Below are positions 1 to 55,799 of a DNA stretch of 64,000 bases, in pieces. The notes beneath the pieces were generated by a model. The model saw only the letters and a program-made list of their open reading frames with translations. It was not told where the DNA came from and did not search any database. Source of the DNA: Diplonema japonicum (taxonomy: Eukaryota; Protista; Euglenozoa: Diplonemea); the NCBI GenBank assembly GCA_964019335.1, contig OZ025690.1, forward strand, positions 489,868-553,867. Reading direction: 5' to 3'. Within the stretch, counting starts at the first letter, position 1. Each line of letters opens with the position of its first letter. A program made the translations under genes and the position numbers.

Positions 1-3000
1 CTCACGTATCGCAAAGCAGGCTGGCACGTGCGGGAGCTCATGAAGCCGTCACAGACAGCAACCTCTGATGACTGTTTTGCTGACGCAGCGGCGAAAGGTA
101 TAACCTGTGTACTACTACAGTCCTTGGGACCAGAGATCCTATCTTCCTTTGGTTCCAAGTATGTTGACCCTTCATCGCCGTTCTTGAGGTAGCACTTCTT
201 TGTCGAGACCTTCCACGTCCAGAACTGACATCGACTGTTTGCCTTGCAGTACGTAAGACAGTGCAACGCTGAAGTTGCTGTCTTCTTTCCAATGGCATTA
301 TCGTAGCCGCGTGCGACGTAGATTGCATTCCTGTACATGCAGCTGCATGCCTTGCACTCTGGATAGGCGTCTCCTATATACGATTTGGCGTAGTTTGGGG
401 CCTCTCCCTGTCCCACGAGGTCAGTGATGAGAGATCCACATGTCGTTTTCTGATAAGCAAGGGTGTTCCACGTGGGGCTATCTACACCACACGGGTCTGG
501 AGTGCATGCACCACATTTCCACGCCTGCTGAGTTGCAGCCATGGTGCGTGCTTCGTACTCAGATAAACCATTCGCAATGTACGTAGATATCATCGACCCA
601 CACGTTGAAGAACCCACGGCCACGTCCCACACATCGCTACAGGGGTCGGGACAGTCAACACGTACGGCGTGTAAACTAAAGGCACTGTCGCCGTCTTGGT
701 CTGCAGCACCGAATACCAGCTTAATGTGCGTAACACTGTTGTACTTCCTTCCAAACGCGTGTCTAGTGAAAATACCGAAACGGAACATAGGTGCCATCTC
801 ACGATACGTAGTATAAATGTGCGCCCCATAAGCATCTCTGCGGGCATCGTAAGTGCCATACATGAGCTCGCTGTTGTAAGCAAGCAGCCACGTCCTGCCC
901 CTGTCTGTGGACACATAGGCACGGATGCCTGAGTACCCTGTGGACACGGTCTCTTTGTTTACTAAAATAGACACGGAGCCCACATCATGTGACCCATGCA
1001 AGTCCAACGACATACTGTACTCAGATGAGTTCGCAGTACGGTACCTAATCCAGTTGATGCCGCCGTTTAAGGCGTCATTCACAATGCCACGCGCGGAGAA
1101 CTTGTCGCGGTTGACGCTCTTGTCGGCACTGTGGATGGTGCCTGTGAGGTCTTTCAAGAAACATGTGCCTGGTGCGAATTCCGGCTCCCACTTGTTGATG
1201 GGATTGAGCACAATGCTATCGAAGGTAACTGCTGCGCCACGCGGCGTGAAAGTCAAACGCATGTGCCTTACATTTTGTCCATCTTGTAAATTGTGCACAA
1301 AAGACTCTGCGTTGCCTGCTGTGCTGGGGAAAAAGCTGCCGACCATTTGGAAGGCTTCATTCCAAGCAATGCCATCTGACGAAACAGTGATAACTAAGCC
1401 AGCGTAGCCACCAAGGGGGTCACTCACTGAGACCGACACGCTGCGGATGTCCTGCTCACCAACCTGGAGCACCACTGTGACGGTGGCACTGGTGCTCTGT
1501 ATTGTGATCGGGTTCTGGTCCCCATTCAGTACAGGAGACAGGTCGGTGAGCAGCATGACATTTCCTGCAGAAGCATAACCACTCACGAAAGGCACTGACG
1601 GTAGACCGCAACAACTGTGGTACTCACCATTGTCACCAGGGCAGCAGTTCCCTTCTATATTTGTACACTGCGGGTGCGCAGCACATTGTTCGTTTGTAAA
1701 CTCTTGTGAAGCGTACCCACTAGCGCACAGGTTGCACTCTTCGCCCGACCATCCCTCTTTACACTCGCACACACATCTGCCAGCGGAGTAAATAACCGAA
1801 TGAGCATTCCCGCTGCAGTGTTGCTGCAGACCGCAAGGTATGCACCGTGGATAGTCAACATAGCCGGTTGCGCATTCATCGCAATCACTTCCTGCAATGT
1901 TGTAGGGACAAGCCTTGCAGTCGGGAAGCGACCATTGGTTGCGACACTCACAGAAGCACTCGCTCTGGTCAAGATCCAGTCGGGCCTCGTTGGCATGTCC
2001 AGCACAAGACGTCTCGACGGTACAGTAGCTACAGGTTGGAAAACCGTAGCGCCACTTGCCACACTTTGTGCAGCTATCGCTGTATTGCGGTGGACACACC
2101 TCGCAAGTGTCACCTGTCCACAACCCCACGCATGTGCACTTGCATGTTCCCGTGCGCGACGTTTCTTGCACATTAACAAAACCGTTGTTTAAACACACGC
2201 ATTCACGGCAGGTGGGGGGATCCACCCTGCCGTCTGCACACTCGTTGCAATTGCCTCCCTGACGGTACTGCAAATCGCATGTGTCGCACTTTTTACCTCG
2301 CCAGAAGTTGTTGCATGCACACAAGCACTCTTCCTGATTGCTTGTCACACTGTCAGCATGGCCGGAACAGTGCTCAGCCACCAAACATTCACCGCACGCT
2401 GGGTACCCGAAGCGCGATGCAGCGCACTCGTTGCAGTTGGTACCACTGAAACTGCTGGGACAGGTTTGGCATTGCTGACCAATCCATTGGTTGAAGCAGT
2501 TGTTGCAGATGCATGTGTCCCTAGCGGCGTTAGATGTCACATCCGCTTGGGGAGAGCGCCCTTGGCAGTGAATGGCAGCCTCGCACTTCACACACTCGGC
2601 AGCAACAGAGACGTAGCCTTCCATGCACACAGCGCAGTCATGAGCAGTACTGTAGCCATACGGGCACAAGTTGCATGTTTGGCCATGCCAATGGTTCCTA
2701 CATGAGCAAACGCAGGCACCGTTAACAGCGTTTGCCTGGCCATGTTCGGTGCAGTCGGCACTCGTGCACTGCCTGCATGTGGGGTAGTAGGCGTATTGTG
2801 CTGCGCACCTGTCGCACGTTGACTGGTCGTACTTCTCTTGGCAACTATCGCACCGCGCTCCGGTCCATTTTTTGTTGCAGTTGCAAACACACGACACCCT
2901 ATCTAACGTAGATGAGTAAGGCACCCCGTGATCACCACAGTCAATAGCGTTGCACTGCCTGCAGTGTGGTGCCACACCTACGTAGCTGTCACTGCATTTC

Positions 3001-6000
3001 TTGCAGTCCTCATCTACGTCAATGCCAGTGGGGCACACAGCACAGGCAGCCCCCGTCCACGAGTTGCGACAAGAGCAAAGACACGTGTCCTTGAGTACAT
3101 TACTAGTCACAGACAGTGCATTGCCCGTGCAGTGTTCTTGGGTGTTGCATTTCGTGCACAACGGGAATCCGATGTGGCCTTCTGCGCAAGTGCTGCACGT
3201 TGCTTGGTCATACTTCACAGGACACACCGAGCACGTTGGTCCCTCCCACTTTGCTGCGCATGTACAAGTGCAGGTGTTGCCATCCGTAGACCCAACGTCC
3301 ATTGCGTGGTCGCTGCAGTGTGTGCTGAAAGAGCACTGCTCGCACCCCGCAGCATAATTAATCCAATTATCGAGGCATCTATCGCAAAGTGCTCCAGTAA
3401 AAGGAAACGGGCATGTTTGGCACGCAGCGCCGACCCATTGGTTGTCACATGTGCAGACACACTTGCTGTGGTCAGAATTGGACATTGTTGTTAATGCGTG
3501 GTTGCTGCAGCTTTCCTCCACTGTGCAGCGCGTGCACTCAGGGTAGTTGATATAGCCGAGCTGGCATTCCCCACAGTCCCGTGCAGGGTCGTAGACGGGA
3601 GGGCACACATTGCACTGTAGGCCCGTCCAGCTGTTGCGGCATGCACAGTGACAAGTAGTGTTGTCAAGACTCTGCACACTTGATGCGTGGTTGCTGCAGT
3701 GCGTTTGGACCTGGCACGGTATGCAGTCAGGGTACATGATGTGGTTAGCTGCGCACTTGTTGCAGAAGCTCCCTGCAAACTTAGGCAAGCAAGTGCACCT
3801 GCACTCAGAACCAAGACTACTAACTACACTAGATGCATGCCCATTGCAATGCACAGCTGAGGAACACGGCTCGCAGTTCGGTATGTTATGATTGGCCGCA
3901 CATATGTCACATGCCGTACCGCCATACTGCTGGGGACACGTCTCGCAGCTGTCACCCGTCCAGTGCCCCGTACAAGAGCATTCACACGCTTGGCCGTCGT
4001 ATGATGTTGCGCTCGACGCGTGCCCACTGCAGTGCTCTGCAACGGTGCACCGCAAGCATCCCTGGTTGTATTTAATAAATCCGGTGGCACATGCGTCGCA
4101 ATCCAGCCCCCCAAATTCGGGGGTGCATTGATTGCACTTCAAGCCTGTCCATGAGTTTCTACACGTGCAAACACATGCTGTGTGCAGATTGTTCGAGTAC
4201 ACAGCAGTAGCGTGTCCTGAGCAGTGTGCGTCCGTATCGCATTTGCCACATTCAGGGAACACGACAGCCGCGTACCCAGGGGCACACGTCCCACAGTCAT
4301 GTGCCTCGTCGAACTTTGGTGGACATGTTGCACAAGAAGTCGCCTCGCTCCATTGATTGCGACATTCACACAGACAGCGCTGCTGATCAGAGCTCGCCTG
4401 GACAGCCATCGCTTTGTTGTTGCAGTGCCTGCCCACATCACATAATGTACACGTAGGGTACGAGATGCGATTGGCACTGCAAGCACCGCAATCAGAATGT
4501 GCATCGTAAATACTAGGGCAGATATCACAATTAGGGCCCGTCCAGTGGTTCCTGCAGAAGCACACACAAGATACTTCGTCTATTGCAGTTACATTATGAG
4601 CATGATCTGAGCAGTGCAGAGAAACGCTGCATTTGTAGCAAGTGGGATACGAGACATGTCCAACCGCACATGAAGCACAGCTATTCTCTTCGTAAATAGG
4701 ACTGCAGTGGTCACAAGAGGCACCCGCCCACTCCCCAGCGCAATCGCACACACACATGTCGAGCTCAGACGTCACAGCCACAGCTCGTCCATTGCAGTGC
4801 TTTGCTGTGGTGCACTGCTCGCAAGTAGGGCCCACGTACCCCGTGGCACAAGTCGCACACGTCAGTTGATTGTACTGTACAGGACATAAGTTGCAAGTGT
4901 CACCAGTCCAGTGGACGGCACAGCTGCAGGTGCACAAGGTATTATTGCCGTTGGAAGTCACTGTGCGTGCATGACCCGAGCAGTAGGCATCGTTGGTACA
5001 TTTTCGACATGCCGGGTAGTTGATGTGCCCAACAGCGCACTGATTGCACTTCTTACCTGTGAAACCAGTATTGCACCCTTCTTCCGGGGGCGTTTCAGGT
5101 AAGCTCTTGCCATCGCAAAGTGGACGCGCCACGTACGTGACAAGGGGCGCTCTGGTACAGATGTAACTATCGAATTCCGTGTTAATGACGCCATTGCCTG
5201 CAACAGAGACAAACTGGCACGTGTGCCAATCGTCGCCGTTCTTTTTCCACGACGTGCCTGAACACCCATATGTTTCCTCACACATCTTGCGGCACTCATC
5301 TGCAGAGGAGGCAGGGCGTGGCACTTCTTTGTACATGCTCTGGGACCTCCAGTCCAGCGACTGCTGGATAGCTTTGTTCGACAGTATCGACCATGTGCAT
5401 GGGGCAATGGGTCGCTTGCAAACCATACTGCTGAAGAGGCCTGAAGCCACACCCCGTCCTACTTTCGCGACGAAGAAGCACTTGTGGTACTGCGGGTGAG
5501 ACGGGTCGTCTTTACGCCATGAGAAACCTATGCAGTCCTCCATCCCTTCGCACAAGATTTGACACTCTGCAAATGTCGCAGCATCGCTATGCAAGGCATA
5601 CGACGAGTCTTCAGCAAGACTGTCGTAGTCCTTCATCAGTGCTGTGTTGTCCATCACCACCCAGTCACAGGCAATGTTTAGTGTGCTCCCCTCACATGCA
5701 CAACTATGTTTCACTCCATTTTCGTCTTTCGCACAGTGCTCGTTGTTACTACACGTATTAAGGAAATTACATGTTACGCCAGATGGCTCCCTGCAAGACT
5801 GTTTACTTAGCAAGCACTCAGGTACTTCACCAGGTGGTGTCATACACAAGCATTCCGACTTATCAGCACTTGGCCTTGCACTGTGAGCATTGCTGTTGCA
5901 ATGGTCCAGGTCACAAATCGTGCAGTTGTTCCCTGCAAAGTCTTTTTTGCAAGTACCACAGTCCAATTGCGGATCAAAGCCATGCCGGCAGACACTACAC

Positions 6001-9000
6001 TTATCACCCTCCCACTTGTTCCTGCACGTACACGTACACTGCGTGCTGTTCGGTTCCGATCCGACAGCTGAGGCATGCCCGCTGCAGTGGGTGTCGAGGG
6101 AGCACGGAAGACACAGCCCGCCCACCTCGACGAAGCCAGCCGCGCACACCGGGGAGATCCCGCTGCAGTCGTAGTTCGGGGGACAGATCCCACAGGCCGA
6201 TCCCGTCCAAGGTACCTTGCACACACAGACGCACTCATCGTTCGCAACGTATTCATCGCTGGAGTGCCCGTTGCACGCGGCCCCGTCGCACAACTTGTCG
6301 CACACGGGCCACCCGTGCAAGCCCTCGCTGCACCCGTCGCACTCGTCTCCGCCATACTGCGAGGGACACACGTCGCACCCCTCCCCAGTCCACTGGTTCG
6401 AGCATCCACTCGAGTTGCACACACAACGCTGCTGCCCAGCATCCGTAGACACGAGAACAGCCCGTCCAGAACAGTCCGCACCGTTGTCACAGGCCCGACA
6501 CCCAGCCTCGCTCTGCACCGAGATGTGAAGGGAAGAACACCCATCGCAGGTAGGCCCGTTTTCCTCGAAGCGGGTTGGGCAGGTCTCGCATTGAGAACCC
6601 TCCCACCTCCCGGTACAGGTGCAAACACACTGCGAGTGGGTCTCGTCAGAGGTCACAGAGGAGGCGTGGCCTGAGCAATCCCCTCCCACAGTGCAAGCCC
6701 TGCAGCTCGCTCCTTCCCACACGTGTCCAACAGAGCAGGTTGCACAGTTCGGGGGAGAGTAGGCCGCAGGACACCCACAGTCGCAGCCTGTTTGGGTCGC
6801 GTTCGCCGAAGAGCTCCCGCGCCCGCTGCAGTGTCCGACAGAGGTGCACGGGACACAGGCCTCGCCGACAGAGATGTGGTTCGAAGCACAACCGTCGCAA
6901 GTGGGTCCTGCAAAGGTGGCCGCACAAGAGGAACAGTTGGATCCCGCCCACCTTGTCGTGCAGGAACACAAGCACTCGGTGCCCCCAGAGCCCACAGTCG
7001 CAGTCACAGCCCTCCCGTTGCAGGAGGCATCTACACTGCACACCTTGCACTCCGGATAGTCGAACCTCCCAACAGCACACTCCCTGCACCCAGACCCAAG
7101 GGAGTACTCCTCAGGGCACACCTCGCAGTGCAAACCGGTCCAACTGTCCACGCAAGCCCCGCAGCTGCAAGCATTGTTGTTCCCAGTCACCTGCGCCCCA
7201 GAGAGCAGGCGGCCGTTGCAGTGGTCATCGTTCGTGCAAGCCGAACACATCGGATAGCCAGACCCGAAGCCCACACCGCACGCCCCGCAGTCAGCTGAGG
7301 CATCGAAGCGCCCAGGGCAGACAGAGCAGTCGGGACCGCCCCATTGGTTTCGGCAGCTGCAAGAACAGGTCGTCCCGTCGCTCGTCACCCCGGTTGCGTG
7401 CCCAGAGCAGTCACCGCTCGTCGTGCACTGCCGGCACTCGGGGTGGTTCGTCCTCCCGTTCGCACACGTCCCGCAATCCAGAGAGGAGTTGAAGCGTCCC
7501 TCGCACACAGAACAGTCGTCCCCACTCCACATTGCACGACAGGTGCATGAACACCCGTTGATCTGCACCGCGTGCCCGCTGCAGTGCGTCTCTGTAGTGC
7601 ACTCCGCACAAGCAGGGTATCCGGTGTAGCCGAAAGAACAAGCCCCACAGTCTTTTGCAGGGTCGTACCGAACAGGGCACTCGTCGCACCGCACACCTTC
7701 CCAGAACCCGGGGGCATCACAGCTGCACACGCACACCCTGCTCCCTCCCCTCACCTCGATACCTGCCGAGGAGGCCCGACCGTTGCACTGGGCCGTCGTG
7801 CAAGGCTCGCAGGTAGGGTAGTTGTCCAAGCTTGTGGGGGCACACTCGCTGCAGTTCGATCCCGTGAACCTCGAAGGACACGTCCCGCAGTTCGTCCCGG
7901 TCCACTGGTGCCAGCACTCGCACTCGCAGGTGCTCCCGTCGCTCTTTGCAACTGAGTTCCCGTGGTTGCTGCAGTCTCCCTGCACACACTTTCGACACCC
8001 ACCGGTCCCGTCCCTCGCGTACCCGGCGTCGCTGTCGCACTGCTCACAAAGCCTCCCTTTAAAGCCAGCTGCACAAGTGCAAACACACAATGTCTTTTGA
8101 CTATTCGATGTCACCCACGTTGCCTCACCTATGCAGTCTTGCAAAGTGCACAGCTTGCATGCCGCACCGTATCTATGAAGAGCACACTGATCGCAGTTTG
8201 CACCAGCAAACTGAGGCAAGCAAGTTTCGCAACTAGAACCTGTCCAGTGATTGGTGCAGGTGCAGATACAAGTGGTCTGCGAGGGTCCAGGTACTGCAAG
8301 TGAAGCATGATTGTTGCAATGTGTCACAACGTCGCAAGTTGTGCAGCGCTTGATGCCTTGAGTAGATGAGCAGTCACAGCCACGGGGCGAAATACAAGAT
8401 GTGATTTCAGAATGTGAATCAGCCATATCTTGGCACGCGCCGGCATAGACGGCGCAGGCGCCGTTGATAAAGGACGTGTAGTCACCGCCTGATGTGTGCC
8501 CATGTAGCAAACATTTGCTATTCGTGAGCATACTGCTCCAGCCGAGAAGCACACAGTCAGCACCCTCAACAAGCGACTTGTGTGTGAAGGTTTGACACGA
8601 GGTTCCCGATGTCCCTTCAGACACTGAGGAGGCAGTGCAAGTGTGACAAGTGTCCCCTGACCAAGTAGGCATGCAGGTGCATACACAAACTTTATTGCTG
8701 GCATCAGAAGTCACTGCCACAGCGCGCCCATTGCAATGATCTTTGTTTGTGCACTCGACACACACGCTGAGTTCGTTTATATATCCAATGTCACATGTAT
8801 CGCAGTCTGTCCCAGTGTAGGGGAATGGACAAAGTGCACAAGACGGGCCAGTCCAGTGTGTGCGGCATTGACAGCTACATGTTGTTTTTGTTTTACTCGT
8901 GACACCTGTAGCACGGCCATTGCAGTGTTGAACCGATGTGCATTCGATGCAGTCAGGGTAACTGATATACCCAACAGCACATTCGTTGCAACCCTCTCCG

Positions 9001-21000: not shown

Positions 21001-24000
21001 GTGAACTTCCATGGGCAATTCTGACAGTAAGTTCCAGTGAATTGATTGTCACACGTGCAGCTGCAGACCGCACCATCAGATGAGACTGTGACAGCACGTC
21101 CGTTACAACGAGCTTCCGAAGAACATATGTGGCAGTGTGGATAGTTCCACCTTTGCACGCCGGATTGGTCATAGCCGCAAGTATTGCAACTCGAGCCGGA
21201 GTACTTCTCAGGGCACACACTGCAGTCAGCACCTTGCCAGTTTCCTGTACAGCTACACACACAGTCTGAGCGAGCAGCATTAGGCCGGACGGATGTGGCC
21301 CTATTGTTGCAGTCTGCAAACATTGTACATGCCCTGCATGTAGGGTAGCGCACGTAGTTGTCGGCACATTTATTGCATGTCGCGCCCTTGAATCCGGGTC
21401 TGCAGTTGCACAGACATGCAGTACGTGTGAAGTCAGAAGTGACAGAAGAAGCATGGCTGTTACAATTGCCCTCGTTGGTACACTTCAAGCAGCCCGGGTA
21501 GCTTATGTAACCAGCGGCACATGTGTTGCAGTTACTCCCTGCTTTCGGGTGTGGACACGTGTTACACGAACTCCCTGACCAGCTGTTCTTACAAGTACAA
21601 ACACAGGCGGTCTTGTCGGCGTTGGGTGCCACGCTGATAGCATGGTCACTGCAGTGCTGCTTCACACTGCACTGCACGCAGCTGGGGTACCCAATAAAAC
21701 CATCGGCACATGATTCACAGATTGCCCCAGTGTAACCAGTGACACACTGGCACCCCTGTCGACAGATCCCTTTGCCGCTGCATACTAATCCTGCGGCATT
21801 CTTGTCACAAGTCTCTGTTTGGCACATATCACCTTTGTAGCCGTCCTCGCACATACATGTCCCTTCGGCCCACGAAGCGTAACTACCTAGTATCTGGAAA
21901 GCAACAATGGTGTCGTCGCCGCCACCGCACATTGCACCCATTCCGCACGGACTACCGCAAGACGAGGCTTGCAGCTGTGCCATCGGCAGTGTGTTTCCGC
22001 AGTAACACTCAGCATTCTTGCTGTTAATCGCAAAGTGGGTGAAGGCGCTCCTTCTGCAGGTATCATGACATTTTGCAGGTGTCGCCGTGCCACTAAGCAA
22101 AGCCACCTTCAGCCCCAGCGTGCCCCTGAAGCACCCGACTCTAGTAAATGACAATGCTGATGTTGCACTAAGGCCATCGCTGGATATCCTGGCGCGCTGT
22201 GTCTGCGTCAAAGGTGTTGACAGAAGCACTACATGCGACAATTTGTACTTCGTGGCATCTATCTCAAGCTCGTCAATAGCAGCTGTCTCCTTCAGCTCTG
22301 CAAACACAACATGCCAGCTGTTATCGGACAATGTCGGGCATGTGGGATGGGCTACTGTGTCTCTTCTCCCGCAGTCGAGGCAGTCAGTGCCCAGGGCGCA
22401 CCTTGCGGTATTAGACCTTGGCCCACCATCATCGCATGCGCTATTGCCCGACCAGGGGCACGTGTTTGTGCAGGGCTTTATGATTCGTGGGCCGCAGTCA
22501 GTGCAGTCGGTGCCATACTTGCATGCCCTATATCCCGACCCTGTACCTCCGTCGTCACATGTCCCGTCTCCCGCCCACCTGCTGTCGCCGCCTTCGCAAG
22601 TGTCTGAGCAGAGTTCGTTCGCAGACGGGGGGGACAACGTCAGCTCATTGGTGCCTTCATCAACATGGACAGATGCCCATGCACTTCCAGGTCGCCAGTC
22701 GCCCATGCTGAGGCCAGAGCTTGCTACTGACGTAGTTAGCATGTGACTCCTGCTGCACACGGTAGCAGGCACCTGAACACGCATCACAACAGTGCGAACG
22801 CGCAGTGTCTTTGGGGTACAAGAGACTTCGGGGAGACACTGTCGTAGCCCTCCGTAAGATGCCTCGCAGATAGACTGCGACACAGCGCAGATATGGTCTG
22901 AGTGGTGCCTGCTCGTGGGTAACGGTGACTTATCGTTGCACATGTACGGGTAGTCTGAGGAACATCTCTTTCTGCCCCCTTGATTGTGACAGCATGCCCA
23001 ACCTCTTCGCCTCGAGTCACAGGTGCTGCCATCATTACACTCCAGAACACCCCACTTTCCAGTATGAGTACTCCATGCACAAGATGCCGTCGGGGTGCCT
23101 GGACTTCCCAACTCGGAGCACTTCTCCACGATGAAGATCGACCGGAGGGACTGGCGGAGCCTCGTAAAGCAGCCGCCAAGATCCTGGTTACACCTCCTCG
23201 CAGAGTCTGTGCAAGAGCGCTGGTTTCTGGAAGAGCAAATAGAGCGACTCACCACACACAATGCCCCGCACCTGTAAGGGTGAGAAGAAGGGCATGCATT
23301 CGCAAAACACATCTGGCCTACAGCTTGGTAACCGCTCTTGCATGGTTGTATGCAGTATCGACGCGAGTACTGTATGTGACCTCTCCTGCACCTCCACGAC
23401 TTCCATGAAATTGACCTGTAGTACATAGTAGGCATGCATGCATCAGACATGCTGCACGGGCTGCAATCACCACCGCAATCAACACCTTTTTCGTTCCCAT
23501 TCTTGATCCCGTCGTGGCATGAACTGGGGCACTTTGGTGCCACAAGCTTCAACACGTTGCCAGTCACAGAAACCTGCGTAACCGACACTCTTCCTGCTTT
23601 TGGTTCTAACGGCCACTCGGGGCCTGCCGAGTTTCCCCACTGCAACAGTGCACCAGCTCTTGACTGCACTCGCCGGTTCACGTACCAACCCGCCGTGACA
23701 TCGACACCCTGCAATACTTTTGGCATGGGTGTGGATGAACGGGAGGGGGCTACGTCTGGCACCCACGAACACTTTACGTCGTTGTAGCATGGCTTTGGGA
23801 AGGTGTGTGCCGCACATCGCGACGCAGACACTGACCCCGCTGCAGGCGAGCACTTGCCAACAACACCATCATTACAAATGCCTTTCCCGTTGCAGGTCAC
23901 ACCCTTCCATTTAGGACAGGAGTTCTCACAAGCGTCACCGTAGTACCCATCGTCGCACGTGCATCTTCCCGACCCTCTGCTGCCATCGCTGCATGTGCCT

Positions 24001-27000
24001 CGCCCGCTGCACACACCGGTACCTGTTGCGTAGCCTGGGCATGTCTCTGTGCAGCGTGTGCCAGCGACACCACGGTAGCATTTACAAGACCCATCGCCAG
24101 TTATGCCCGAGTGACATGTCCCTTTATTGCAGTTAGGACAGTTGTTCTTGCACTCACTCCCATAGTAGCTTGACTGGCAGCCTTGGCATTTTTCACCAGT
24201 CCAATAGCCGTGTGAGCTACTCGAGCGGCATTTACAAAAGCCATCACCATTCACCCCATCGTTGCAAACTCCATGTTTCCCACACCGGCACACTCCACTG
24301 CAGTCTTCACTGTAATATCCTGTGGCACAAGTGCAGATGCCAATTTTGGTGTTTGAGGGGTTTGCCGTGTCGCACGATCCATGGCCGCTGCAGTCATTCT
24401 TGCACACGAAGTCATTATCATCCACACCTACGATGACCTCTCGTGCGTAGCCAGGGCACTGAAGGTTGGGCAACTGCAAGGTTTGCAAAATCCTCGTATT
24501 CCTTCGTGTACCCGTCACTTGTGTGTCATCGATGGCTCTGAAGCGTGAGTTTTTGGACTGCCCGGCGGTGCCATATACGACATCGCCTCCACCTGGTGCA
24601 TAGGAAGCCAATGCATCGAAGGAGTGCTTTAAGACAGCAGATGCTGAGGTTGCCCACGACCCTGTGATCTTGAATGGCACAGTAAAAGAATCGCCCTCCT
24701 GTACTACAAGGTTTGAAGTAGTTGTGGTTGTGCTGACAACTCTGAGCTGCATAGGGAATGAGTGCATGGACCCCGCCCTAACTATCAAGCTTCCCCGATA
24801 CGTACCCGGGCTGAGCAGAGATGGTATTTTGATAACTAAATTGACAGTAGTCTTGTATTTGCTGCCCTGCCTCACGACAGCCATGAAACCCTGCGGTGCA
24901 ATGTTCACAGCGTTGCTAGAGATCTTGTCGCTCCTGGAGGCCTGCAAGTCCGATATCTCAACAAGTCCTGAAAAGGGCGCGCCCTTCGAAAGGGTAGCCG
25001 TGATGGGTACATTACAGCCAGGTGCCCCAACAAACGTCCCGCTAGAGACCTCAGCCACGGAGCTGAAGTCAACAGCGATAGGGGCCGTAGGGGGTGCCCT
25101 GTTGACGGTGAAGGTTCTATGGACAGTTCTTGAAAAAGTAGAGTTGCCAGCACAGTCATGGGTACCGGAGGCTACGATCGTCGTCTGATATGTCCCCACT
25201 TGCGAGGTGTCTAGGTAGTACCCTCGGAACTCGCCTGGGCTCATGCCGTCCGAAAGCGTCACCGACGCAGTGCCTCCTTGTGGACGCGTAAGGGTGACCT
25301 CGACAGTAATTCCGGTAAGCTTTCTACCCGTAGTGATGTCCGTGACCGTGGCTGTGAAAGGGACAGGGTTCCCGAGGTTGTAGCTTTGTTGCAGTTGTAC
25401 TGTGAGGACCAAAGTGCTGACACCTGTGATGCGTGTTAATACGGATACAGCAGATGAGTGATATCCCACAGGGCTGATTCTGACACGGTACGCCCCTACT
25501 TTGTTGCCCTTCCCTATCGTGTATGTCCTGAACGGTCCTGAGGTGCCGTACGTCACAAGGTTGCTTGATGCGCTGCTGATAACAGCACCCCCAGGCACAT
25601 GCAGGTAGGTCTTATATTGGAAGGACGTCAGCCCATCACCCACCAAGATCCTCGCTTGTGTGGGAAGTGACCAGCTGTCTATGTTTATATCAGCCCACAC
25701 ATCATCATTCCTAATGGTGCCAGAGATGCGTGCCAGCTCCGACTCTCCCTTTACCTCTGTGAACAGGTCGTTGTAAATGTCACCCAGCTCAGACGCCGTT
25801 GCGGCGTACTTGAACATCCCACCAGTCCATGCTGCGATTAATGTGAGCTTTTCAGGATCCTGCGCACACCCCGAGCCGAGACACACGGTGTGGATTTTTA
25901 CGTGCTTCGCGGCTAGGTTTTCATCAATCCACCTTTTCCAATCCTCAAGCATCTGGCTCTCCGTGCGTCTGGGATTCCAGGACTCTATGCCGTCTGTCAT
26001 CACCACCATCACCTGCGGCCTATTGCCAGAAGCAGCTTTTAGCTTCTCCCACATTCTCTTTACACCCGCAAGGATATTGGTACCACCGCTGGCGGGTATG
26101 TTGATCTTATTCCTGAGCGTGTTACGGTTGTTGTCCATGATCTCCGTCAACTCGATCGAGTTATGTGCATAGCTGCTGAACATCACCAGTGCGATGTGGT
26201 CTCCGTTTCTCGACTGGTCCACGACGCGCCGTGCATACTCTGTCCGCATGTTCTTCCTGTCGTTCCAAGACATGGATCCTGACCTGTCAAGCACGAGGCC
26301 GATGTCCAAACGTGTCTCACGCTCTTGAGAGTAGTGCACAGAGACCGTCATGTCTGTCACCATTGCCAGTATGTTACACCCTCTCGCGAGCCACACCGAC
26401 AGAGGGTACGTGCCACCCGACGGTTGGGGCGGGGTCGCAATGGTGAGCACGTAGCTCTCGCTTGCCTCTTCGTAACCCAAGGTGAATGACACAAACTTAC
26501 TGCCAACGGCCACTGCAAGGTCCTCGTGCCTGATGCCCAAGGCCGTGCTGCCGTCCACCGTCACCTTCACCGTTGCCAACAGCGAGGGCAGAGGCTGCTC
26601 GTGACTACCAGCGAAGAAGGGACTCGATGCCAAGGGCGACAAGATCTTCACAGCAACATCTCCTGATACAAACAAGGGCATTTTCTTGCTGAACTCCGTC
26701 AAGCCCTGCAGCCCAGCGCGCGACCAGAAAGCACTGATGTACATGTAGTAAATACCTCCACTCGCTCCTGGTAGTGTGAAAGATGAGGTAAGTGTCTTGG
26801 CCTCTCCTTCCGCAAAGGACAGGGCCCCGTTGCCAAGGTTCAGATTAGACTGCAGAGTGACCCCTTGCATTATGATGCTAGTCAGGCCTGTGACTGTGAC
26901 AGGGTAGGGGTTGGTATTAGTGATCTTTAAAGTGATCTGTACATTTTCCCCTGCGGCGTATTGCTGCTTCGAAGTTTGAGGACACAACGACACCGTGGGT

Positions 27001-29953
27001 GGCAAGGGGCACGAAGTGCACAAGCTAGGTGATGCACCTGCTGCCGCTTCCACAGGTGCGTTGATTTGTTTCTCGCGACAGGTGCACACTTGATGAACAC
27101 CTGACTCGTCCTTGCAGCCGGGGTGCAGGTTGGTCGTACCAGGCGCATAGCAGTTTGCGTCGCACCATGACACAGCAATATTTTGCAGCGAACCCCGTGC
27201 AGTTGTCGTCCATACGAGACACTTCCCTACATCATTTTCTTGGAAGGGGTTCTCACAGTTCTGAACACAGTTTTGACCAGCCTGCTCTACGCACCTTCTG
27301 GTGCTCTTTTCATGCTCCCCACAGCATTCCATTTCAGCATAACACATTTCACTCCTTACTCTGCCTTTCATACAGTTCTGCAAGGCTTTCTTTGTGCACA
27401 GTGAACACGACACTTGAGGTTTGCGAAGAGTGCATTGCTTGTACTCCCCTATTCCCGATGAACAATAAACAGTTTCTGTTGAACCTGAACCACGCACCTC
27501 AAACCTGCCCTTGCACCCGTCCTTTACATAGAAGTGACCATCAGGTGTGAAGCCATAGGTCGTGTGGTAAGTGCAGGTCCGGCATCCAGATGTCCTTTGT
27601 ATGAGACTCACAGCGCACGTGGATGTGCTTGGGGCAGCAACAGCAGCGCAGCTCGAGCACTGGGGCATGGGTGTCCGGAGTGAACACTCCTTGTATTGAC
27701 CCCAGCTGGAACATGCAAAAGTCCTCCCGTTAACACGGAATTTAGCGCGGCAACCATCGTTCACAAAGAACTTACCATTTGGTGCGAAACCGTAACTAAC
27801 CTGATAGACGCAGTCTTGAGAGCTGTACCGCTGCTTGATCTCAGCATCACAAGAAGCGGGTGGAGTGGTCAGGCATCTTGAGCAAGAAGGCCGTCGTGGT
27901 GAAATGTCGCAAGTCGTGTACATGCTGCTCCACGAAGAGCAAGTAAAGACGTAGCCGTCTGATAGTTCGAATTCGCCTCTGCAGTTGTCATCTACGTAGA
28001 ACTTGCCGTCAGGTGTAAACCCGTAGCTTACGTGCAACACACAGTTGGCAAGCCCCTTCACAGCACGTAGTTTCACGGAGCACAAGTCGGTTTTGGTGTC
28101 GACGGGCGGGAGCGCATCAGAAGCAACAGGTGCCTGAGCAATGCAGCTATAGCCGTCTTCGATCGTGCACGAAGCACTACATCCGTCGCCATTTTGCAGG
28201 TTGCCATCATCGCACTCCTCATTCCCGTCGATGGACCCATCACCGCACGTTACAACTGTCCAGTGAAGTACCACCTTCCCATTGCCTCCGTCTTTGTCAA
28301 ACACGTCACCCCCTCGTGCCACACGCCCTGAGTAGTAAACCTCACGTGTTGCAGGCGGGGATGCACCATTACCTGACTCGACATTGCCATTGAAGGTGTA
28401 GCTGCTGCCACCACCCCCTCCACCACCCCCTCCTTGCTGCCCCGAACCGCCACCGCCACCACCTCTGTATCCAGCGCCGCCACCTCCTCCAGCACCTCCT
28501 ACGTAGACAACTTCCGTAGGTGCCTGTAGTTTGTTTGAACACTCGCAACACATACCGGAGTGTTTTGGGGCTCGTCAAGCACTCTGCATGTCCATCCGTA
28601 TCTCCGGTTGCAAGACCTCTTGCACTGCGCGTACCACCTGTTGTACTCATAGCATCTTGTGTTCCCTGCGCAGCAGTCACCCACGCGGCAACTTTGCCAT
28701 TCCCATTTTCGTCTACACGAAGTGCTTCCCGACCCTGACCCAGATGGTGAGGTAACTTGAGTATTGATAACGGCGACGCTTGTCCCTCCCACACCTCCAG
28801 CACGCCACCCTGTGCCACTTCGAATGGCAGTGTTACTTGAAGTATACCCCCCAGCACCCCCAGTGCCAATGGTGCTACCTGCGACACCGTTCCCACCCCC
28901 ACTACCAGGCAAGGTAGGAGAGGCGCCTCTCCCGTGCAACTGCGTGCCCGTTGAAGATGCGCCATCAGCACCATTTGCACCACCAGCACCTCCACGGTGG
29001 CACCTGCCAGTACGGCAGCCACCAGACCCGCCGCCACCTGCTGCGACAGCCAGAAGTTCTGTACCCCGCAGAACAGCTGTAGCCCCACCTCCAGATCCAG
29101 AGGTGCCCGAAGCCGTGCTTCCAACACCACCGGAGGCAACGATGACAGTCAGCACATCGCCTTCATTGACAGTCACACGGCTAGTTGTGTAGCCCCCAGC
29201 ACCACCCGTGGCTAGGTAAGAAAGCCACGTATCACTGCTAGCCGTGCATTGTGCCTCCTGCGCTGTGTTGAAGGCCATGGAGCTAGACACCCGTTTCCAG
29301 CACTGCCCGTTGTCTGAGTCTCCTGAGCCACCGCCCCCACCCCACAGCTTCAGGAGCACGGAAGAAACCCCAGAAGGTACCGTGAAGGTGGTTGTGCCAG
29401 AGGTGTAAACCTGCGCACGGTTGAAAGACACGGAAGGGTCTCTGTTAATAGTGGAAGGCCAGTCGTATGACATATGCACGTCATTGATACAGGCACCTAC
29501 GCCGTTAGGAGCTACATCGATGCGTGCGATAGGTGCTGTAGTCGAGAGGAAGCCAATGAGCCCGTCTGTGGTGCTGCTCGTGGTGGCGATCTTGTTCCCT
29601 TTTGAGTCATATGAGGTGAGCGCCCACCCTGAGGCGTGTGGGTCCCACAAGTCAAGAAGTACCTTTGTAACGTGAGGAGTGAAGTGCATTTTAAATGGTT
29701 CTGTTTTACTGCAGTCTGCTGCATTGTTGATACCCCACCCATCTCCCCTTAAGTTGATGTCCCCAGGCCCGTGCTCTGGTATCATCATCAACCCTTCCAA
29801 CACTCGCATCGAGCTCTGCGACTCCATCCGCACCCACTTGAAGTCCGTTGTCATCACCTTCTCACCAATGAAGGTCACTGTCTTGTCGTACGTGCCTTCC
29901 AATCTTGCTAGTGCGCATCCTAGCAGCAGCATTACCACCCCACCAGGGCCCAT
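1..29953 (-). CDS. Giant secreted multidomain Cys-rich adhesin/ECM-like protein, >9,970 aa, incomplete at the 3' end; exons 29953-28556 and 28523-<1
   Basis: ATG at 29953 starts MGPGGVVMLLLGCALA (signal peptide-like) after a poly(T) tract. Removing the GT..AG intron 28524-28555 joins ..QNTP to APTEVVYVGGAGGG. No listed minus-strand ORF between 1 and 28.5 kb uses this frame (left end = 0 mod 3), as expected if it has no stop. Spot translations near 28.2, 27.9-27.4, 26.3, 20.8, 18.5, 1.4 and 0.05 kb all give coherent domains. Not every codon was read. Confidence 0.92.
680..1600 (-). other. Two discoidin/galactose-binding-like beta-sandwich domains in the giant protein
   Basis: VITVSSDGIAW..VRHMRLTF and SLDLHGSHDVGSVSI..AYVSTDRGRTW..VTHIKLVF. 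Confidence 0.5.
5140..5660 (-). other. Two PAN/Apple-like domains inside the EGF array; others near 18400-18580 and 120-330
   Basis: TFAECQILCEGMEDCIGFSW..KCFF, SADECRKMCEETYGCSGTSW..TCQF and SALHCLTYCKANSRCQFWTW..KCYLK..ISGPKDC. Confidence 0.75.
7255..7547. repeat. 293-bp exact intragenic duplication, copy 1
   Basis: Identical base for base to 13717-14009. The offset of 6462 is a multiple of 3. Confidence 0.95.
13717..14009. repeat. 293-bp exact intragenic duplication, copy 2
   Basis: Identical to 7255-7547. It forms a GC-rich island in a ~50% GC context. Confidence 0.95.
21890..22140 (-). other. WSC-like carbohydrate-binding domain in the giant protein
   Basis: RVGCF..AKCHDTCRRSAFTHFAI..ECYCGN..CGSPC..CGG..IVAFQ. 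Confidence 0.7.
22365..22615 (-). other. Two CDDGG..C..GTDC.DCG Cys repeats in the giant protein
   Basis: CDDGGTGSGYRACKYGTDCTDCGPR and CDDGGPRSNTARCALGTDCLDCGRR. Confidence 0.75.
25760..26310 (-). other. von Willebrand factor A domain with an intact MIDAS, followed by Ig-like beta domains to ~24500
   Basis: DIGLVLDRSGSM ... SGGTNI ... VMVVMTDG ... IHTVCLG ... IAAWTGG. Confidence 0.9.
27430..28090 (-). other. Three tandem DUF3011/lectin-like beta modules in the giant protein
   Basis: CVLHVSYGFTPDGKFYVDDNCRGEF, CVYQVSYGFAPNGKFFVNDGCRAKF and CTYHTTYGFTPDGHFYVKDGCKGRF. A divergent fourth copy lies near 13310-13440 (GYLHVDTSCDAQY). Confidence 0.65.
28140..28250 (-). other. Myxococcus-type cysteine-rich repeat (DUF4215-like) in the giant protein
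   Basis: CGDGSIDGNEECDDGNLQNGDGCSASCTIEDGYSC. Confidence 0.85.
28260..29410 (-). other. Glycine-rich domain of the giant protein, interrupted by a CBM1-like module (~28622-28720)
   Basis: [61 protein letters not shown]. The insert CCAGNTRCYEYNRWYAQC resembles the CBM1 C-terminal motif C-x-x-G-x-x-C-x3-N-x-W-Y-x-Q-C. Confidence 0.7.
28524..28555 (-). other. 32-nt spliceosomal intron (phase 0) in the giant gene
   Basis: GTATGTGTTGCGAGTGTTCAAACAAACTACAG. Its removal fuses ORF 28499..30013 to the 28.5-kb open frame and restores a continuous Gly-rich domain. Confidence 0.9.
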
Positions 29954-30219
29954 TGCCAGGCCCGACTGTTTTTGGTTTTCCTTTTTTTTTTTTTTTTGGT
30001 TTGTGTAAGTCAAATGAGCGTTCCTGGAATGCAGTGCTTACATAGTATGCAGTGTGAAGGAATACAGTCTATCTAAGAAATCTAAGAGCACCCGGCATCC
30101 TACTCTTCGCGGACAACAAAATATGAGCGAGTACAATATTTTGGGGGAGGGAATATGTCTTTTTTTTTCTTCTTCTTCTTTTTTCTCCTCGTTCTTCGTT
30201 TTCTCTTAACTCCGGTGAT

Positions 30220-34287: not shown

Positions 34288-34347
34288 TTTAACCTTAAGT
34301 GAGATGAGTTGTTTTTGAACAAAACAGTGACATGAACTGATGACGCA

Positions 34348-35984: not shown

Positions 35985-36380
35985 CTTGTAGTACCTGACT
36001 ATGATGGATTAAAGGTTGCAGGTTGAAGAAACAAAGAAACACATGAAACACTTTTTAAAAGGATGGCGCCGGGGCCAGTAATCATTTTTTTACCTTTCAG
36101 GTTCCTTTTCTTTTTTTTTTTCAGCAGAAAAATAGGCATCGTGATGGCGGAGTATGCTTGGCACTCAGAAAGAAAAGGAGGAAAAGCCACTATGATGGGG
36201 GGAGCGCTGGCAGCAACACCCCCTCCAAAAAAATAATCATAAACTGCTACGGCAGCGCACACTGCCTTTTGTAGACACTCTGGGGTACAGGGCAGCAATG
36301 TTGCGATAAAGTCGGAAGCCAAATGATAATCAAGGAAGCTAGAGGAGCCGCACAAATACGTACAGGTCGCTGCATCACTT

Positions 36381-38256: not shown

Positions 38257-38384
38257 CTTCACCCACTAAGGAAACAGCCTGTCTTTACAACTACAATGTC
38301 AATATTCTTTTTTTAAAAAATAAGAAAAAAAACATATAAATGTTAACTGAGAAAAGGGGAAAAGTTACTGTTTTTCTTTCTTTC

Positions 38385-39788: not shown

Positions 39789-39847
39789 GTTATGTGTAAA
39801 TGTGTCTGCAGTAGTATTGGCGTGTGGCATAAAAGCTTTTCAAATTT

Positions 39848-40780: not shown

Positions 40781-40913
40781 CACTGTGGTGCGTAAAAGGG
40801 ATGGCGTGCAAAATCAACAAAGAGGGCACCCAGAAAGGTATCGCTCGGAAAAGGCATTTGTCATATTCATCAACAGATAGAGACGTGGTGCCGTCTAAGA
40901 TAGTGTCGATTGG

Positions 40914-54211: not shown

Positions 54212-54366
54212 CGCGGGCAATCATATTTATGATTGGCATGTCATTCCTGTGTGTGGTGAGGACTACGGGATGTGTGCCGAATGCAAAGATGCCACAGTCA
54301 CAGCTGTATGCAAAGAAATACACTGTTAAGTTAACTGGTTGCACTTGTTACCAATCACCATAAGGT

Positions 54367-55553: not shown

Positions 55554-55799
55554 TTTTAATTGTCCCTGAATGTAGTTTATGCAACAAATAAAGTTTAAAG
55601 AAAAGAAGAACAAGAAAAACATGGAAGAAAGGCGGTTTATGACAATTGTTCAACAGAAAATTGTGCAAATTCGCCAGTACCACTCCTTCTAATAACACAT
55701 GCGTGTGTTCTGGTTCACGAAGAATAAGAGCATCATGTCTTGGGTTGTTGAGAGAATTGTGCAACAAGGGTAGCATTACAATGTATCAAGCCATAAGGC

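What the first reader, a model, noticed from the sequence alone, without database searches (positions are those of the whole stretch)
1..29953. Hidden >9,970-aa secreted protein encoded almost entirely by one exon of at least 28.5 kb
Seen: a 32-nt intron links a signal-peptide exon to a minus-strand frame with no listed stop down to base 1. The ORF track omits it because it never terminates in the window. A head of binding modules (Gly-rich, CBM1-like, 3x DUF3011-like, vWA with MIDAS, WSC) sits on ~90-100 disulfide-rich units, followed by discoidin-like and PAN domains. Known: these families mediate glycan or protein adhesion, and EGF/LE arrays form rods. Inference: a tether several hundred nm long that presents several ligand-binding heads, for example for prey, host or substrate capture.
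Basis: partly seen in the sequence, partly recalled or inferred. Interest (0 to 1): 0.9.

Follow-up and report, generated by a model that had tools for sequence, protein, structure and literature searches.

The report
Giant 21,000-residue diplonemid surface protein
A marine protist (Diplonema japonicum) carries a 64.6-kb gene whose single 59-kb exon would encode most of a 21,400-residue, 2.25-MDa membrane-anchored rod of about 240 laminin-EGF-like modules. The rod carries sugar- and protein-binding domains, which would make it one of the largest proteins and exons predicted in any eukaryote, but no RNA or protein evidence for this gene is in hand yet.

Summary
The open frame is real and twice as long as reported. 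It runs 19,776 codons without a stop, from window 28574 to 30.7 kb beyond the window start (chance about 1e-354).

My model has five exons:
- E1: 466 aa, signal-peptide-like start.
- A 32-nt GTATGT..ACAG intron.
- E2: 59,247 nt.
- Three short 3' exons ending in a transmembrane helix and a 31-aa tail.

The total is 21,397 aa and 2.25 MDa.

No RNA run could be identified, so splicing is inferred from four lines:
- The splice signals match those published for D. japonicum.
- It is the only short GTATG/CAG pair that joins the two frames.
- A paralogue (C74) has the same head in one uninterrupted frame.
- 16 of 22 differences from a 98.5%-identical relative are synonymous.

Pfam confirms Gly_rich_2, VWA (MIDAS intact), WSC, EGF, PAN, C-type lectin, LamG and TIG. 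REJ, discoidin and CBM1 are weak or contextual. DUF3011 is not supported.

The roughly 63-aa, 10-Cys unit (239 copies) folds at pLDDT 97 as a laminin-EGF-like module that Pfam does not recognise. Relatives in other diplonemids are transcribed, one as a 16-kb transcript.

Most likely it is a membrane-anchored glycan-binding tether about 0.7 um long. It is a functional analogue of Drosophila Dumpy, not a family member. I call it a new variant of a known kind.

The parts
28556..29953 (-). Exon 1 (466 aa). ATG at 29953, signal-peptide-like start (MGPGGVVMLLLGCALA), an N-terminal domain, and the Gly_rich_2 domain at 28721..29215.
   Evidence: PF21722, 31.5 bits, cut-off 24.3. 10 of 14 differences from the related strain are synonymous, and there is an in-frame 3-nt indel at 28595. 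Colinear with the C74 paralogue.
28619..28717 (-). CBM1-like Cys knot (E1 aa 413-445, ...CCAGNTRCYEYNRWYAQCK) inserted in the Gly-rich domain.
   Evidence: No Pfam hit on the window. It is homologous to modules appended to LPMO_10 and GH5 cellulase genes elsewhere in the genome. Those modules score 19.7 and 17.4 bits for CBM_1, cut-off 20.6.
28524..28555 (-). Intron 1, 32 nt, GTATGT...AAACAAACTACAG. It shifts from the E1 frame to the E2 frame.
   Evidence: It is the only short GTATG/CAG pair among 189 frame-compatible GT..AG pairs. It matches published D. japonicum intron features (PMC12621601). No RNA evidence; one contig of uncertain kind spans it unspliced.
1..28523 (-). In-window part of exon 2 (9,507 codons).

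The gene continues beyond the window start; the schema does not accept coordinates outside the window, so they are given here.
- The whole exon 2 runs from 28523 to window -30723 (C43:459144), 59,247 nt = 19,749 codons. The outside part holds 142 more units, EGF modules, a C-type lectin domain and the start of a LamG domain.
- Intron 2: -30724..-30759, 36 nt, with an in-frame TGA.
- E3: -30760..-30873.
- Intron 3: 224 nt.
- E4: -31098..-32207 (LamG end, TIG, LamG_3).
- Intron 4: 73 or 49 nt.
- E5: -32281..-34602 = C43:455265-457586 (REJ-like region, stalks, transmembrane helix, 31-aa tail). The stop is at -34605..-34603.
   Evidence: The 3' exons are colinear with P0017 and the C74 paralogue.
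25770..26306 (-). VWA domain with an intact MIDAS motif (DRSGS...T...D), E2 aa 740-918.
   Evidence: PF00092, E 1.1e-12, 49 bits. The motif was read.
28167..28247 (-). DUF4215-type Cys-rich repeat (E2 aa 93-119), followed by three repeats of about 95 aa with no Pfam match.
   Evidence: 25.8 bits, just under the cut-off of 27. The same motif occurs in the C74 paralogue.
23844..24491 (-). EGF-like modules (E2 aa about 1345-1560).
   Evidence: EGF_2 24.3 bits, EGF_Teneurin 23.4 bits.
21921..22139 (-). WSC domain.
   Evidence: PF01822, E 1.1e-8, 35.6 bits, cut-off 27.8. Conserved in the transcript-derived orthologue fragment P0019.
1677..21818 (-). In-window part of the array of ~63-aa, 10-Cys laminin-EGF-like units (97 of 239 units), interrupted by short non-repeat islands.
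6006..8048 (-). First copy of a GC-rich (63%) 2.04-kb / 681-aa module. It occurs five times in the exon at >=99.85% identity. The other four copies lie beyond the window start, inside and beside a 4,467-nt tandem super-repeat.
5079..5930 (-). PAN/Apple-like island (E2 aa 7532-7815).
   Evidence: PAN_4 20.9 bits, PAN_1 18.6 bits; both below cut-off.
1..1676 (-). Island with two discoidin-like stretches (about 846..1079) and a PAN_1 domain (117..281). It continues 228 nt past the window start.
   Evidence: PAN_1 31.7 bits above cut-off; F5_F8_type_C 18.2 bits below cut-off.

Best explanation
What it is: a real, intact protein-coding gene of Diplonema japonicum, about 64.6 kb long with five exons, one of them 59,247 nt. 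It encodes a type I membrane glycoprotein of about 21,400 aa (2.25 MDa).

Shown from sequence:
- A signal-like N-terminus.
- A distal head with a glycine-rich domain, a CBM1-like knot, a VWA domain with MIDAS, and EGF and WSC domains.
- A rod of at least 239 disulfide-locked laminin-EGF-like units, interrupted by PAN and discoidin-like islands.
- A proximal part with EGF, C-type lectin, LamG, TIG, LamG and an REJ-like region.
- Ser/Thr/Pro stalks, one transmembrane helix and a 31-aa tail.

Inferred mechanism:
- The helix anchors the molecule in the plasma membrane.
- The stiff Cys-rich rod holds the head up to about 0.6-0.8 um from the surface.
- The many lectin-type modules and the metal-dependent VWA site bind polysaccharide or glycoprotein ligands on prey cell walls, detritus or substratum.
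- The protein therefore acts as a long-reach adhesion or capture tether.
- Near-identical in-frame duplications show that unequal recombination is still changing the rod length.
For: Gene reality:
- 19,776 codons without a stop (P about 1e-354). The other two frames have 391 and 1,049 stops.
- 16 of 22 differences from a 98.5%-identical relative are synonymous third-position changes (P=1.8e-4), and there is an in-frame indel.
- An independent Illumina assembly is identical over 25000-30900, except across two short simple repeats at 29966-30010 and 30153-30197 that the tool skipped.

One protein:
- The C74 paralogue has signal peptide, N-domain, Gly-rich domain and DUF4215 in one frame, colinear with E1 and the E2 head. 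It also has LamG followed by REJ-like in one ORF.

Introns:
- They have the GTATG/CAG, A-rich and short form published for this species (PMC12621601).
- The 32-nt intron is the only short candidate of that form.

Domains.

Rod:
- AlphaFold pLDDT 97.4 for three units.
- Best matches are netrin/laminin/perlecan LE arrays, probability about 1. EGF cores align at 1.5-2.6 A.

Anchor: a hydrophobic helix and tail at the end of E5. The same layout occurs in P0017 and P0020.

Expression of the family: P0019 is a 5,351-aa product of a 16,151-nt transcript from another diplonemid. It is colinear with E2 aa 2083-4424 at 43-45% identity.

Glycan theme: the CBM1-like module is shared with LPMO and GH5 genes. 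A related diplonemid is reported to be rich in secreted cell-wall-degrading enzymes (PMC10161547).
Against: - No RNA or protein evidence for this gene. No listed run is on record as RNA, and no spliced joint was seen.
- The only possibly-RNA contig over intron 1 is unspliced.
- Exon 1 has no relatives outside this genome in the length range searched.
- The signal peptide and transmembrane helix were judged by eye and hydropathy only.
- The copy number of the 4,467-nt super-repeat (99.985% identical copies) could be off by one in the assembly.
- No ligand is known. The binding function rests on domain names, several of them below Pfam cut-offs (REJ, discoidin, CBM1).
- The rod length is extrapolated from recalled laminin LE dimensions, not measured.
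Confidence: 0.6

Rival explanations
1. Structural surface-coat or matrix anchor, like Drosophila Dumpy. The rod is a load-bearing link between the plasma membrane and an extracellular layer (mucilage, cyst or sessile-stage matrix, neighbouring cells), not a capture device for food.
For: The overall plan is the same as Dumpy's: hundreds of EGF-type modules, a transmembrane anchor near the C-terminus, and concerted evolution of internal repeats (PMC2930355). A large mucin-like surface gene lies nearby. At least ten paralogous array genes suggest a coat-like repertoire.
Against: There is no ZP domain or other known polymerising or cross-linking module. The head is rich in lectin-type and MIDAS ligand-binding domains. 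None of the diplonemid papers read here mentions a structured extracellular matrix for D. japonicum.
Confidence: 0.22
2. Sensory or recognition receptor of the suREJ/polycystin-1 type. The ectodomain (WSC, C-type lectin, EGF, REJ-like) binds a specific glycan signal, such as a mate, an endosymbiont or an environmental polymer. It triggers a cellular response through a partner channel.
For: The domain vocabulary is shared with sea-urchin REJ (EGF, C-type lectins, REJ module; PMC2120838). E5 matches Pfam REJ weakly (21.5 bits) and matches P0018, which has a strong REJ domain (113 bits).
Against: REJ is below the Pfam cut-off. No GAIN/GPS fold was recovered, and the HL of the GPS-like strand is not conserved. 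There is only one transmembrane helix and a 31-aa tail with no signalling domain. A 240-unit rod is unnecessary for a receptor.
Confidence: 0.08
3. The gene model is wrong in part. Either intron 1 is not removed and E1 and E2 are separate products, or intron 2 is retained. Intron 2 carries an in-frame TGA, so retaining it would make the main product a secreted protein of about 20,200 aa without a membrane anchor.
For: No spliced reads were seen. One contig from a related organism of uncertain library type spans intron 1 unspliced. Intron 2 retention adds 10 codons and then a stop.
Against: Without intron 1 removal, E2 would start at an internal Met with no signal peptide, although it is 12% Cys. 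The C74 paralogue shows head continuity. LamG, TIG and REJ-like domains are completed only by the downstream exons, and P0017 and C74 are colinear across them. The splice signals fit the species consensus.
Confidence: 0.1

Closest known systems
Drosophila Dumpy (giant apical extracellular-matrix protein)
   Same: A multi-megadalton protein made mostly of hundreds of EGF-type modules. It has a transmembrane segment near the C-terminus, and its internal repeats evolve by unequal crossing-over (PMC2930355, PMC8520396).
   Different: Dumpy has EGF-DPY-EGF triads, a ZP domain and 78 coding exons. This protein has a 10-Cys LE-like unit, no DPY or ZP, a lectin/VWA head and one 59-kb exon. It is an analogue, not a homologue.
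Laminin-type EGF (LE) rods of laminins, netrins and perlecan
   Same: The predicted fold of the unit array is closest to netrin-1/laminin/perlecan LE arrays (Foldseek probability about 1). Both have a rod-like tandem arrangement and the CxCxC...G..C..C core.
   Different: The unit has 10 Cys in about 63 aa instead of 8 in 50-60. Pfam EGF_laminin scores only 15-16 bits (cut-off 21). There is no LN or coiled-coil domain. The array has 239 units against at most about 20 in laminins (the laminin figure is recalled, not checked here).
[quoted passage not shown]
   Same: Both combine EGF, C-type lectin, WSC and an REJ-like region next to the membrane (PMC2120838).
   Different: The REJ match is sub-threshold. 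No GPS/GAIN fold was shown, there is no 11-TM channel-associated part, and this protein is ten times larger.
Array proteins of other diplonemids known only from transcriptomes and metagenomes (P0019, P0020, P0001, P0002, P0017)
   Same: They have the same 10-Cys unit. P0019 shows the same WSC-to-array junction and islands at 43-45% identity. P0020 and P0017 show the same transmembrane helix and tail at the end.
   Different: They are fragments or smaller members (at most 6,168 aa), unnamed and uncharacterised.

Membership tests
Laminin-type EGF (LE) module, Pfam PF00053 | Profile match above the gathering score | tested here: not met
   Best 15.2-16.2 bits against a cut-off of 21. Some relatives do match (P0006 97.8 bits, P0002 23.4 bits).
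Laminin-type EGF (LE) module | Eight cysteines per module of about 50-60 aa | tested here: not met
   The unit has 10 conserved Cys in 61-68 aa.
Laminin-type EGF (LE) module | LE/EGF fold in tandem rod arrangement | tested here: met
   Model pLDDT 97.4. Foldseek top hits are netrin-1, laminin and perlecan LE arrays, probability 0.97-1.0. VIA Z 4-4.5 with rmsd 1.5-2.6 A over 36-47 residues.
von Willebrand factor A domain | Pfam VWA match and an intact MIDAS motif (DxSxS, T, D) | tested here: met
   PF00092 49 bits. The sequence reads LDRSGSMS...GGTN...VMTDG.
WSC domain | Pfam PF01822 above cut-off | tested here: met
   35.6 bits against 27.8.
C-type lectin | Pfam PF00059 above cut-off | tested here: met
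   44.9 bits against 22.6. The domain lies outside the window.
PAN/Apple | Pfam PAN_1 above cut-off | tested here: met
   31.7 bits against 21.4 at window 117..281. The island at 5079..5930 is below cut-off.
Discoidin (F5/8 type C) | Pfam PF00754 above cut-off | tested here: inconclusive
   18.2 bits against 28.2.
CBM1 cellulose-binding module | Pfam PF00734 match | tested here: inconclusive
   No hit on the window piece at E<=1. Homologous modules on LPMO_10 and GH5 genes score 19.7 and 17.4 bits against a cut-off of 20.6.
DUF3011 | Pfam PF11218 match | tested here: not met
   No hit at E<=0.1 on E2 aa 95-520.
REJ module / polycystin-1 family | Pfam REJ above cut-off | tested here: inconclusive
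   21.5 bits against 25. There is a transitive link to P0018, which has REJ at 113 bits.
REJ module / polycystin-1 family | GAIN domain with GPS (HL/T) next to the membrane, and a multi-pass membrane part | tested here: not met
   The GPS-like strand is not conserved. The model has pLDDT 48.6 and gives no GAIN hit. There is a single transmembrane helix.
Dumpy family | DPY modules and a ZP domain | tested here: not met
   No ZP or DPY match in any Pfam scan of the head, islands or tail.
Type I membrane protein | Cleavable signal peptide and a single C-terminal transmembrane helix | not testable with these tools
   Read by eye: MGPGGVVMLLLGCALA at the start, and VYLFVVLFVVVVLLFLITASFCCYL followed by 31 aa at the end. 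There is no other hydrophobic window in E2. No signal-peptide or topology predictor was available.

The most novel reading that the evidence does not exclude
The 59,247-nt exon may be the longest protein-coding exon, and its 21,397-aa product one of the three or four largest proteins, so far seen in a eukaryote. It would be the flagship of an undescribed diplonemid family of micrometre-scale, membrane-anchored rods. These rods are built from a new 10-Cys laminin-EGF-like unit and are used by abundant ocean heterotrophs to reach and hold polysaccharide-walled prey or particles.
Probability: 0.35. Interest if true: 0.8.

Novelty: new variant of a known kind. Interest (0 to 1): 0.64.

Why it matters
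[quoted passage not shown] A family of giant surface rods with cellulose-, glycan- and metal-dependent binding modules gives a concrete, testable candidate for that contact.
- Scale: a 59-kb exon is more than twice the longest exons listed for model animals (17-27.7 kb, PMC3563967). A 2.25-MDa product raises questions about transcription, trans-splicing, translation, ER import and folding of about 1,350 disulfides in a single-celled organism.
- Evolution: the near-identical in-frame internal duplications offer a live example of repeat-array evolution by unequal recombination.
- Annotation: the D. japonicum genome is not yet annotated. Standard pipelines and ORF listings will miss or fragment this gene and its paralogues.

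Tried and rejected
- RNA evidence: the run search gave no run on record as RNA. A run I did not lay (X5) or X3 might be the species' RNA-Seq; I could not tell.
- Exon 1 search of the 5.8-billion-protein set found nothing at 256-815 aa.
- Exon 5 search of 1.84 billion representatives found only two relatives. The fold prediction from five sequences was therefore poor (pLDDT 48.6), and the GAIN/GPS idea could not be supported.
- PDB sequence search with exon 1 gave only weak sialidase hits, which I judged uninformative.
- Upstream minus-strand ORFs as part of the same gene: rejected. They are kinesin, LSMT-like, FtsH, GDSL lipase, methyltransferase and YTH genes.
- A flanking duplication, suggested by two 1,375-aa ORFs: rejected (6% identity).
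- EukProt hits P0001 and P0009 as transcripts of this species: rejected (at most 50% identity to the genome).
- Literature searches for diplonemid giant or EGF surface proteins found nothing relevant.
Full report
OBSERVATION

It is open from window 28574 to base 3, which is 9,524 codons. I located the window at G000:C43:489868-553867, at the end of a 553,867-bp contig, and fetched the sequence below base 1. The frame continues for 19,776 codons in all, to window -30753.

From base composition the chance of such a stop-free run is about 1e-354. The other two frames of the same strand contain 391 and 1,049 stops. The ATG at 29953, the hydrophobic start MGPGGVVMLLLGCALA and the 32-nt element GTATGTGTTGCGAGTGTTCAAACAAACTACAG at 28555..28524 are as stated.

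ORGANISM AND ASSEMBLY

Earlier notes of this scan call the genome a diplonemid, probably Diplonema japonicum. The size (62.5 Mb, 132 contigs) fits the published D. japonicum YPF1604 assembly: 62.3 Mb, 118 pseudomolecules, 102x HiFi plus Hi-C, QV 59. A poly(A) RNA-Seq run is listed, and the paper says the genome is still to be annotated (PMC13598402).

GENE MODEL (inferred, not shown by RNA)

Just before the stop at -30756 there is a second short intron of the same form, GTATGT...ACAG, 36 nt. More coding sequence follows and completes a LamG domain. Two more introns (224 nt, and 73 or 49 nt) lead to a last exon. That exon ends in a hydrophobic helix (VYLFVVLFVVVVLLFLITASFCCYL), a 31-aa tail and a stop at -34605. 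T-rich intergenic sequence and the next gene follow.

The model is:
- E1: 29953..28556, 466 aa.
- E2: 28523..-30723, 59,247 nt, 19,749 codons.
- E3: 38 aa.
- E4: 370 aa.
- E5: 774 aa.

The total is 21,397 aa, 2.25 MDa and 2,708 Cys, over a 64,559-nt span. I did not build or search a joined protein. All exons were handled separately by reference.

EVIDENCE THAT THE EXONS BELONG TOGETHER

(a) Published D. japonicum introns are 98% GT-AG, have a median length of 41 nt, a (G)/GTATG 5' site, a CAG 3' end and an unusual A-rich tract (PMC12621601). Introns 1 to 3 here fit that form, but intron 4 begins GTTGTT (or GTTTGC), not GTATG.

(b) There are 189 GT..AG pairs of at most 400 nt that could join the E1 and E2 frames. 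Only 28555..28524 (32 nt) and 28555..28437 (119 nt, same donor) have GTATG plus CAG.

(c) A paralogue on C74 (open frame 11,559 aa) has signal peptide, N-domain, Gly-rich domain and DUF4215 in one uninterrupted frame. It is colinear with E1 aa 67-411 (31% identity) and E2 aa 5-163 (33%). The same paralogue and the remote relative P0017 run from LamG into the REJ-like region without interruption, matching E4 to E5.

(d) A 98.5%-identical relative (run X1) differs at 22 sites in E1 and E2. Of these, 16 are synonymous third-position changes (P = 1.8e-4), and there is one in-frame 3-nt indel.

(e) Without intron 1 removal, a 12%-Cys extracellular protein would lack a signal peptide.

WHAT IS MISSING

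No listed run is on record as RNA. The single read-laying run (window 25000-30900, 5,901 letters) showed only contigs and no joints. X4 is an independent study with 16-25 kb contigs and confirms the sequence exactly. X6 has GATC loose ends typical of Hi-C. One X1 contig of uncertain kind spans intron 1 unspliced. Splicing and expression of this particular gene are therefore unproven.

ANATOMY

Pfam hits above the cut-off:
- Gly_rich_2 in E1.
- VWA, with a readable DxSxS...T...D MIDAS motif.
- EGF-type modules.
- WSC (35.6 bits).
- PAN_1 (31.7 bits).
- Lectin_C (44.9 bits).
- Laminin_G_3 and TIG.

Below the cut-off:
- DUF4215 (25.8 bits against 27).
- REJ (21.5 against 25). Its relative P0018 has REJ at 113 bits.
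- Discoidin (18.2 against 28.2).

DUF3011 has no hit.

The 'CBM1-like' knot at the end of E1 has no Pfam hit. It is homologous to modules appended, after Pro-rich linkers, to LPMO_10 and GH5 cellulase genes of this genome. Those modules score just under the CBM_1 cut-off.

THE REPEAT

An HMM built from the sequence finds 239 units, 97 of them in the window. Most have a period of 61-68 aa and 10 conserved Cys: C..C.....HCSGHA..V.......C.C.C.N.W.G..C..CP..Y....C..C..G...YP. About 14 non-repeat islands interrupt the array. Pfam does not recognise the unit.

A three-unit AlphaFold model is very confident (pLDDT 97.4). Its best structural matches are netrin-1, laminin and perlecan LE arrays (Foldseek probability 0.97-1.0). 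EGF cores superpose at 1.5-2.6 A, with VIA Z 4-4.5, which is low in absolute terms as expected for such small domains. The protein-atlas search also points to EGF/laminin-EGF clusters. The unit is an LE-like variant, not a canonical LE.

RECENT DYNAMICS

A GC-rich 2.04-kb (681-aa) module occurs five times at >=99.85% identity. A 4,467-nt block is tandemly repeated about 2.5 times at 99.985%. All offsets are multiples of three. The rest of the array is only about 39% identical between units. The array is therefore old, with fresh unequal-recombination events on top. The copy number of the super-repeat is the one place where the assembly might be off.

FAMILY

The unit occurs in at least ten other loci of the genome. 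Their open frames include 11,559 aa (C74), 8,600 (C9), 4,123 (C11), and about 1,000-2,250 aa on C55, C19, C99, C89, C8, C46 and C68.

Outside the genome the relatives are:
- Transcript-derived proteins of other diplonemids and marine metagenome proteins, at 31-39% identity.
- P0019, a 5,351-aa product of a 16,151-nt transcript. It is colinear with E2 from the WSC domain through aa 4424 at 43-45% identity, so it is an orthologue fragment.
- P0020, 6,168 aa, with 72 units, a transmembrane helix and a tail.

The family is thus transcribed as very long mRNAs in relatives. I found no paper describing it.

NEIGHBOURS

The long minus-strand ORFs upstream in the window are unrelated genes in a same-strand cluster, as expected for Euglenozoa.

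MECHANISM

Shown: the domain order and the rod-like unit fold.

Inferred:
- A type I membrane protein whose helix anchors a stiff, disulfide-locked rod.
- At about 2.5-3 nm per LE-type module (my recollection of the laminin LE crystal structure, not tested here), 239 units give about 0.6-0.8 um.
- The distal head (Gly-rich domain with CBM1-like knot, VWA-MIDAS, WSC), the lectin-type islands and the tail modules would bind glycans or glycoproteins.
- This makes it a long-reach adhesion or capture tether. That fits the reported richness of secreted cell-wall-degrading enzymes in a related diplonemid (PMC10161547).
- The tail contains YSPL, a possible YxxPhi sorting motif. This is weak evidence.
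- Intron 2 carries an in-frame TGA, so its retention would give an anchorless secreted form. This is speculation.

Rivals:
- A Dumpy-like structural matrix anchor.
- A suREJ/polycystin-like sensor.
- A partly wrong gene model.

COMPARISON AND NOVELTY

The protein works like Dumpy, which has more than 300 EGF modules, a transmembrane segment and concerted repeat evolution (PMC2930355). It lacks DPY and ZP modules and is not a family member. It uses LE-like modules but fails two LE criteria: the Pfam score and the 8-Cys pattern. It shares the suREJ/PKD1 domain vocabulary but not the GPS/GAIN or multi-pass parts.

The exon is more than twice the longest exons listed for model animals (17-27.7 kb; PMC3563967). 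I rate it a new variant of a known kind, namely giant EGF-array surface proteins.

Interest is 0.64. The scale is remarkable and the gene is a useful handle on diplonemid cell-surface biology. Expression and function are untested, and giant repetitive adhesins as a class are known.

Noticed in passing
window 41951-54220 (-): A separate 4,090-codon open frame. It has a signal-like start (MIVWWTAWHICLLGV), a long Ser/Thr-rich mucin-like N-terminal part and a hydrophobic C-terminus (possible GPI signal). It has no Pfam match, so it is a second large surface-protein candidate.
   Followed up: partly
window 30223-55649 (-): A same-strand cluster of ordinary genes: kinesin (30223-34347), Rubisco-LSMT-like (34461-36008), FtsH-type AAA protease (36400-38265), GDSL lipase (38388-39839), methyltransferase with CCCH (39851-40813) and CCCH-YTH (54351-55649). 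This fits polycistronic-type organisation.
   Followed up: partly
G000:C74:327509-366339 (+); also C9:33475-45132, C11:721270-726852: Paralogous giant array genes. C74 has an 11,559-aa open frame with the same head (signal, Gly-rich, DUF4215) and a LamG/REJ-like tail in downstream exons. C9 has an 8,600-aa and C11 a 4,123-aa open frame.
   Followed up: partly
L035 (C13:482600-485600), L036 (C63:268000-271000), L034 (C39:208800-212200): LPMO_10 and GH5 cellulase genes carry one or two C-terminal CBM1-like knots (...WYAQCL) after Pro-rich linkers. The modules score just below Pfam's CBM_1 cut-off, which suggests a diplonemid-specific CBM1 variant.
   Followed up: partly
outside the window: C43:459108-459143 (window -30759..-30724), readable in L013: Intron 2 (36 nt, a multiple of three) contains an in-frame TGA. 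If retained, the product would end 10 codons later without the membrane anchor, giving a possible switch between secreted and anchored forms.
   Followed up: no
window 27126-30900: Run X1 (organism A) holds contigs about 98.5% identical to the window, mostly with transitions. It is a closely related strain or species, useful for dN/dS work across this genome.
   Followed up: partly
window 19674-21026 (E2 aa 2526-2933): The islands between units contain ShK-like endings (...LCPHSCRQC, ...LCPASCGNC) and another Cys-rich module also seen at E2 aa about 1800-1900. Neither is recognised by Pfam.
   Followed up: no
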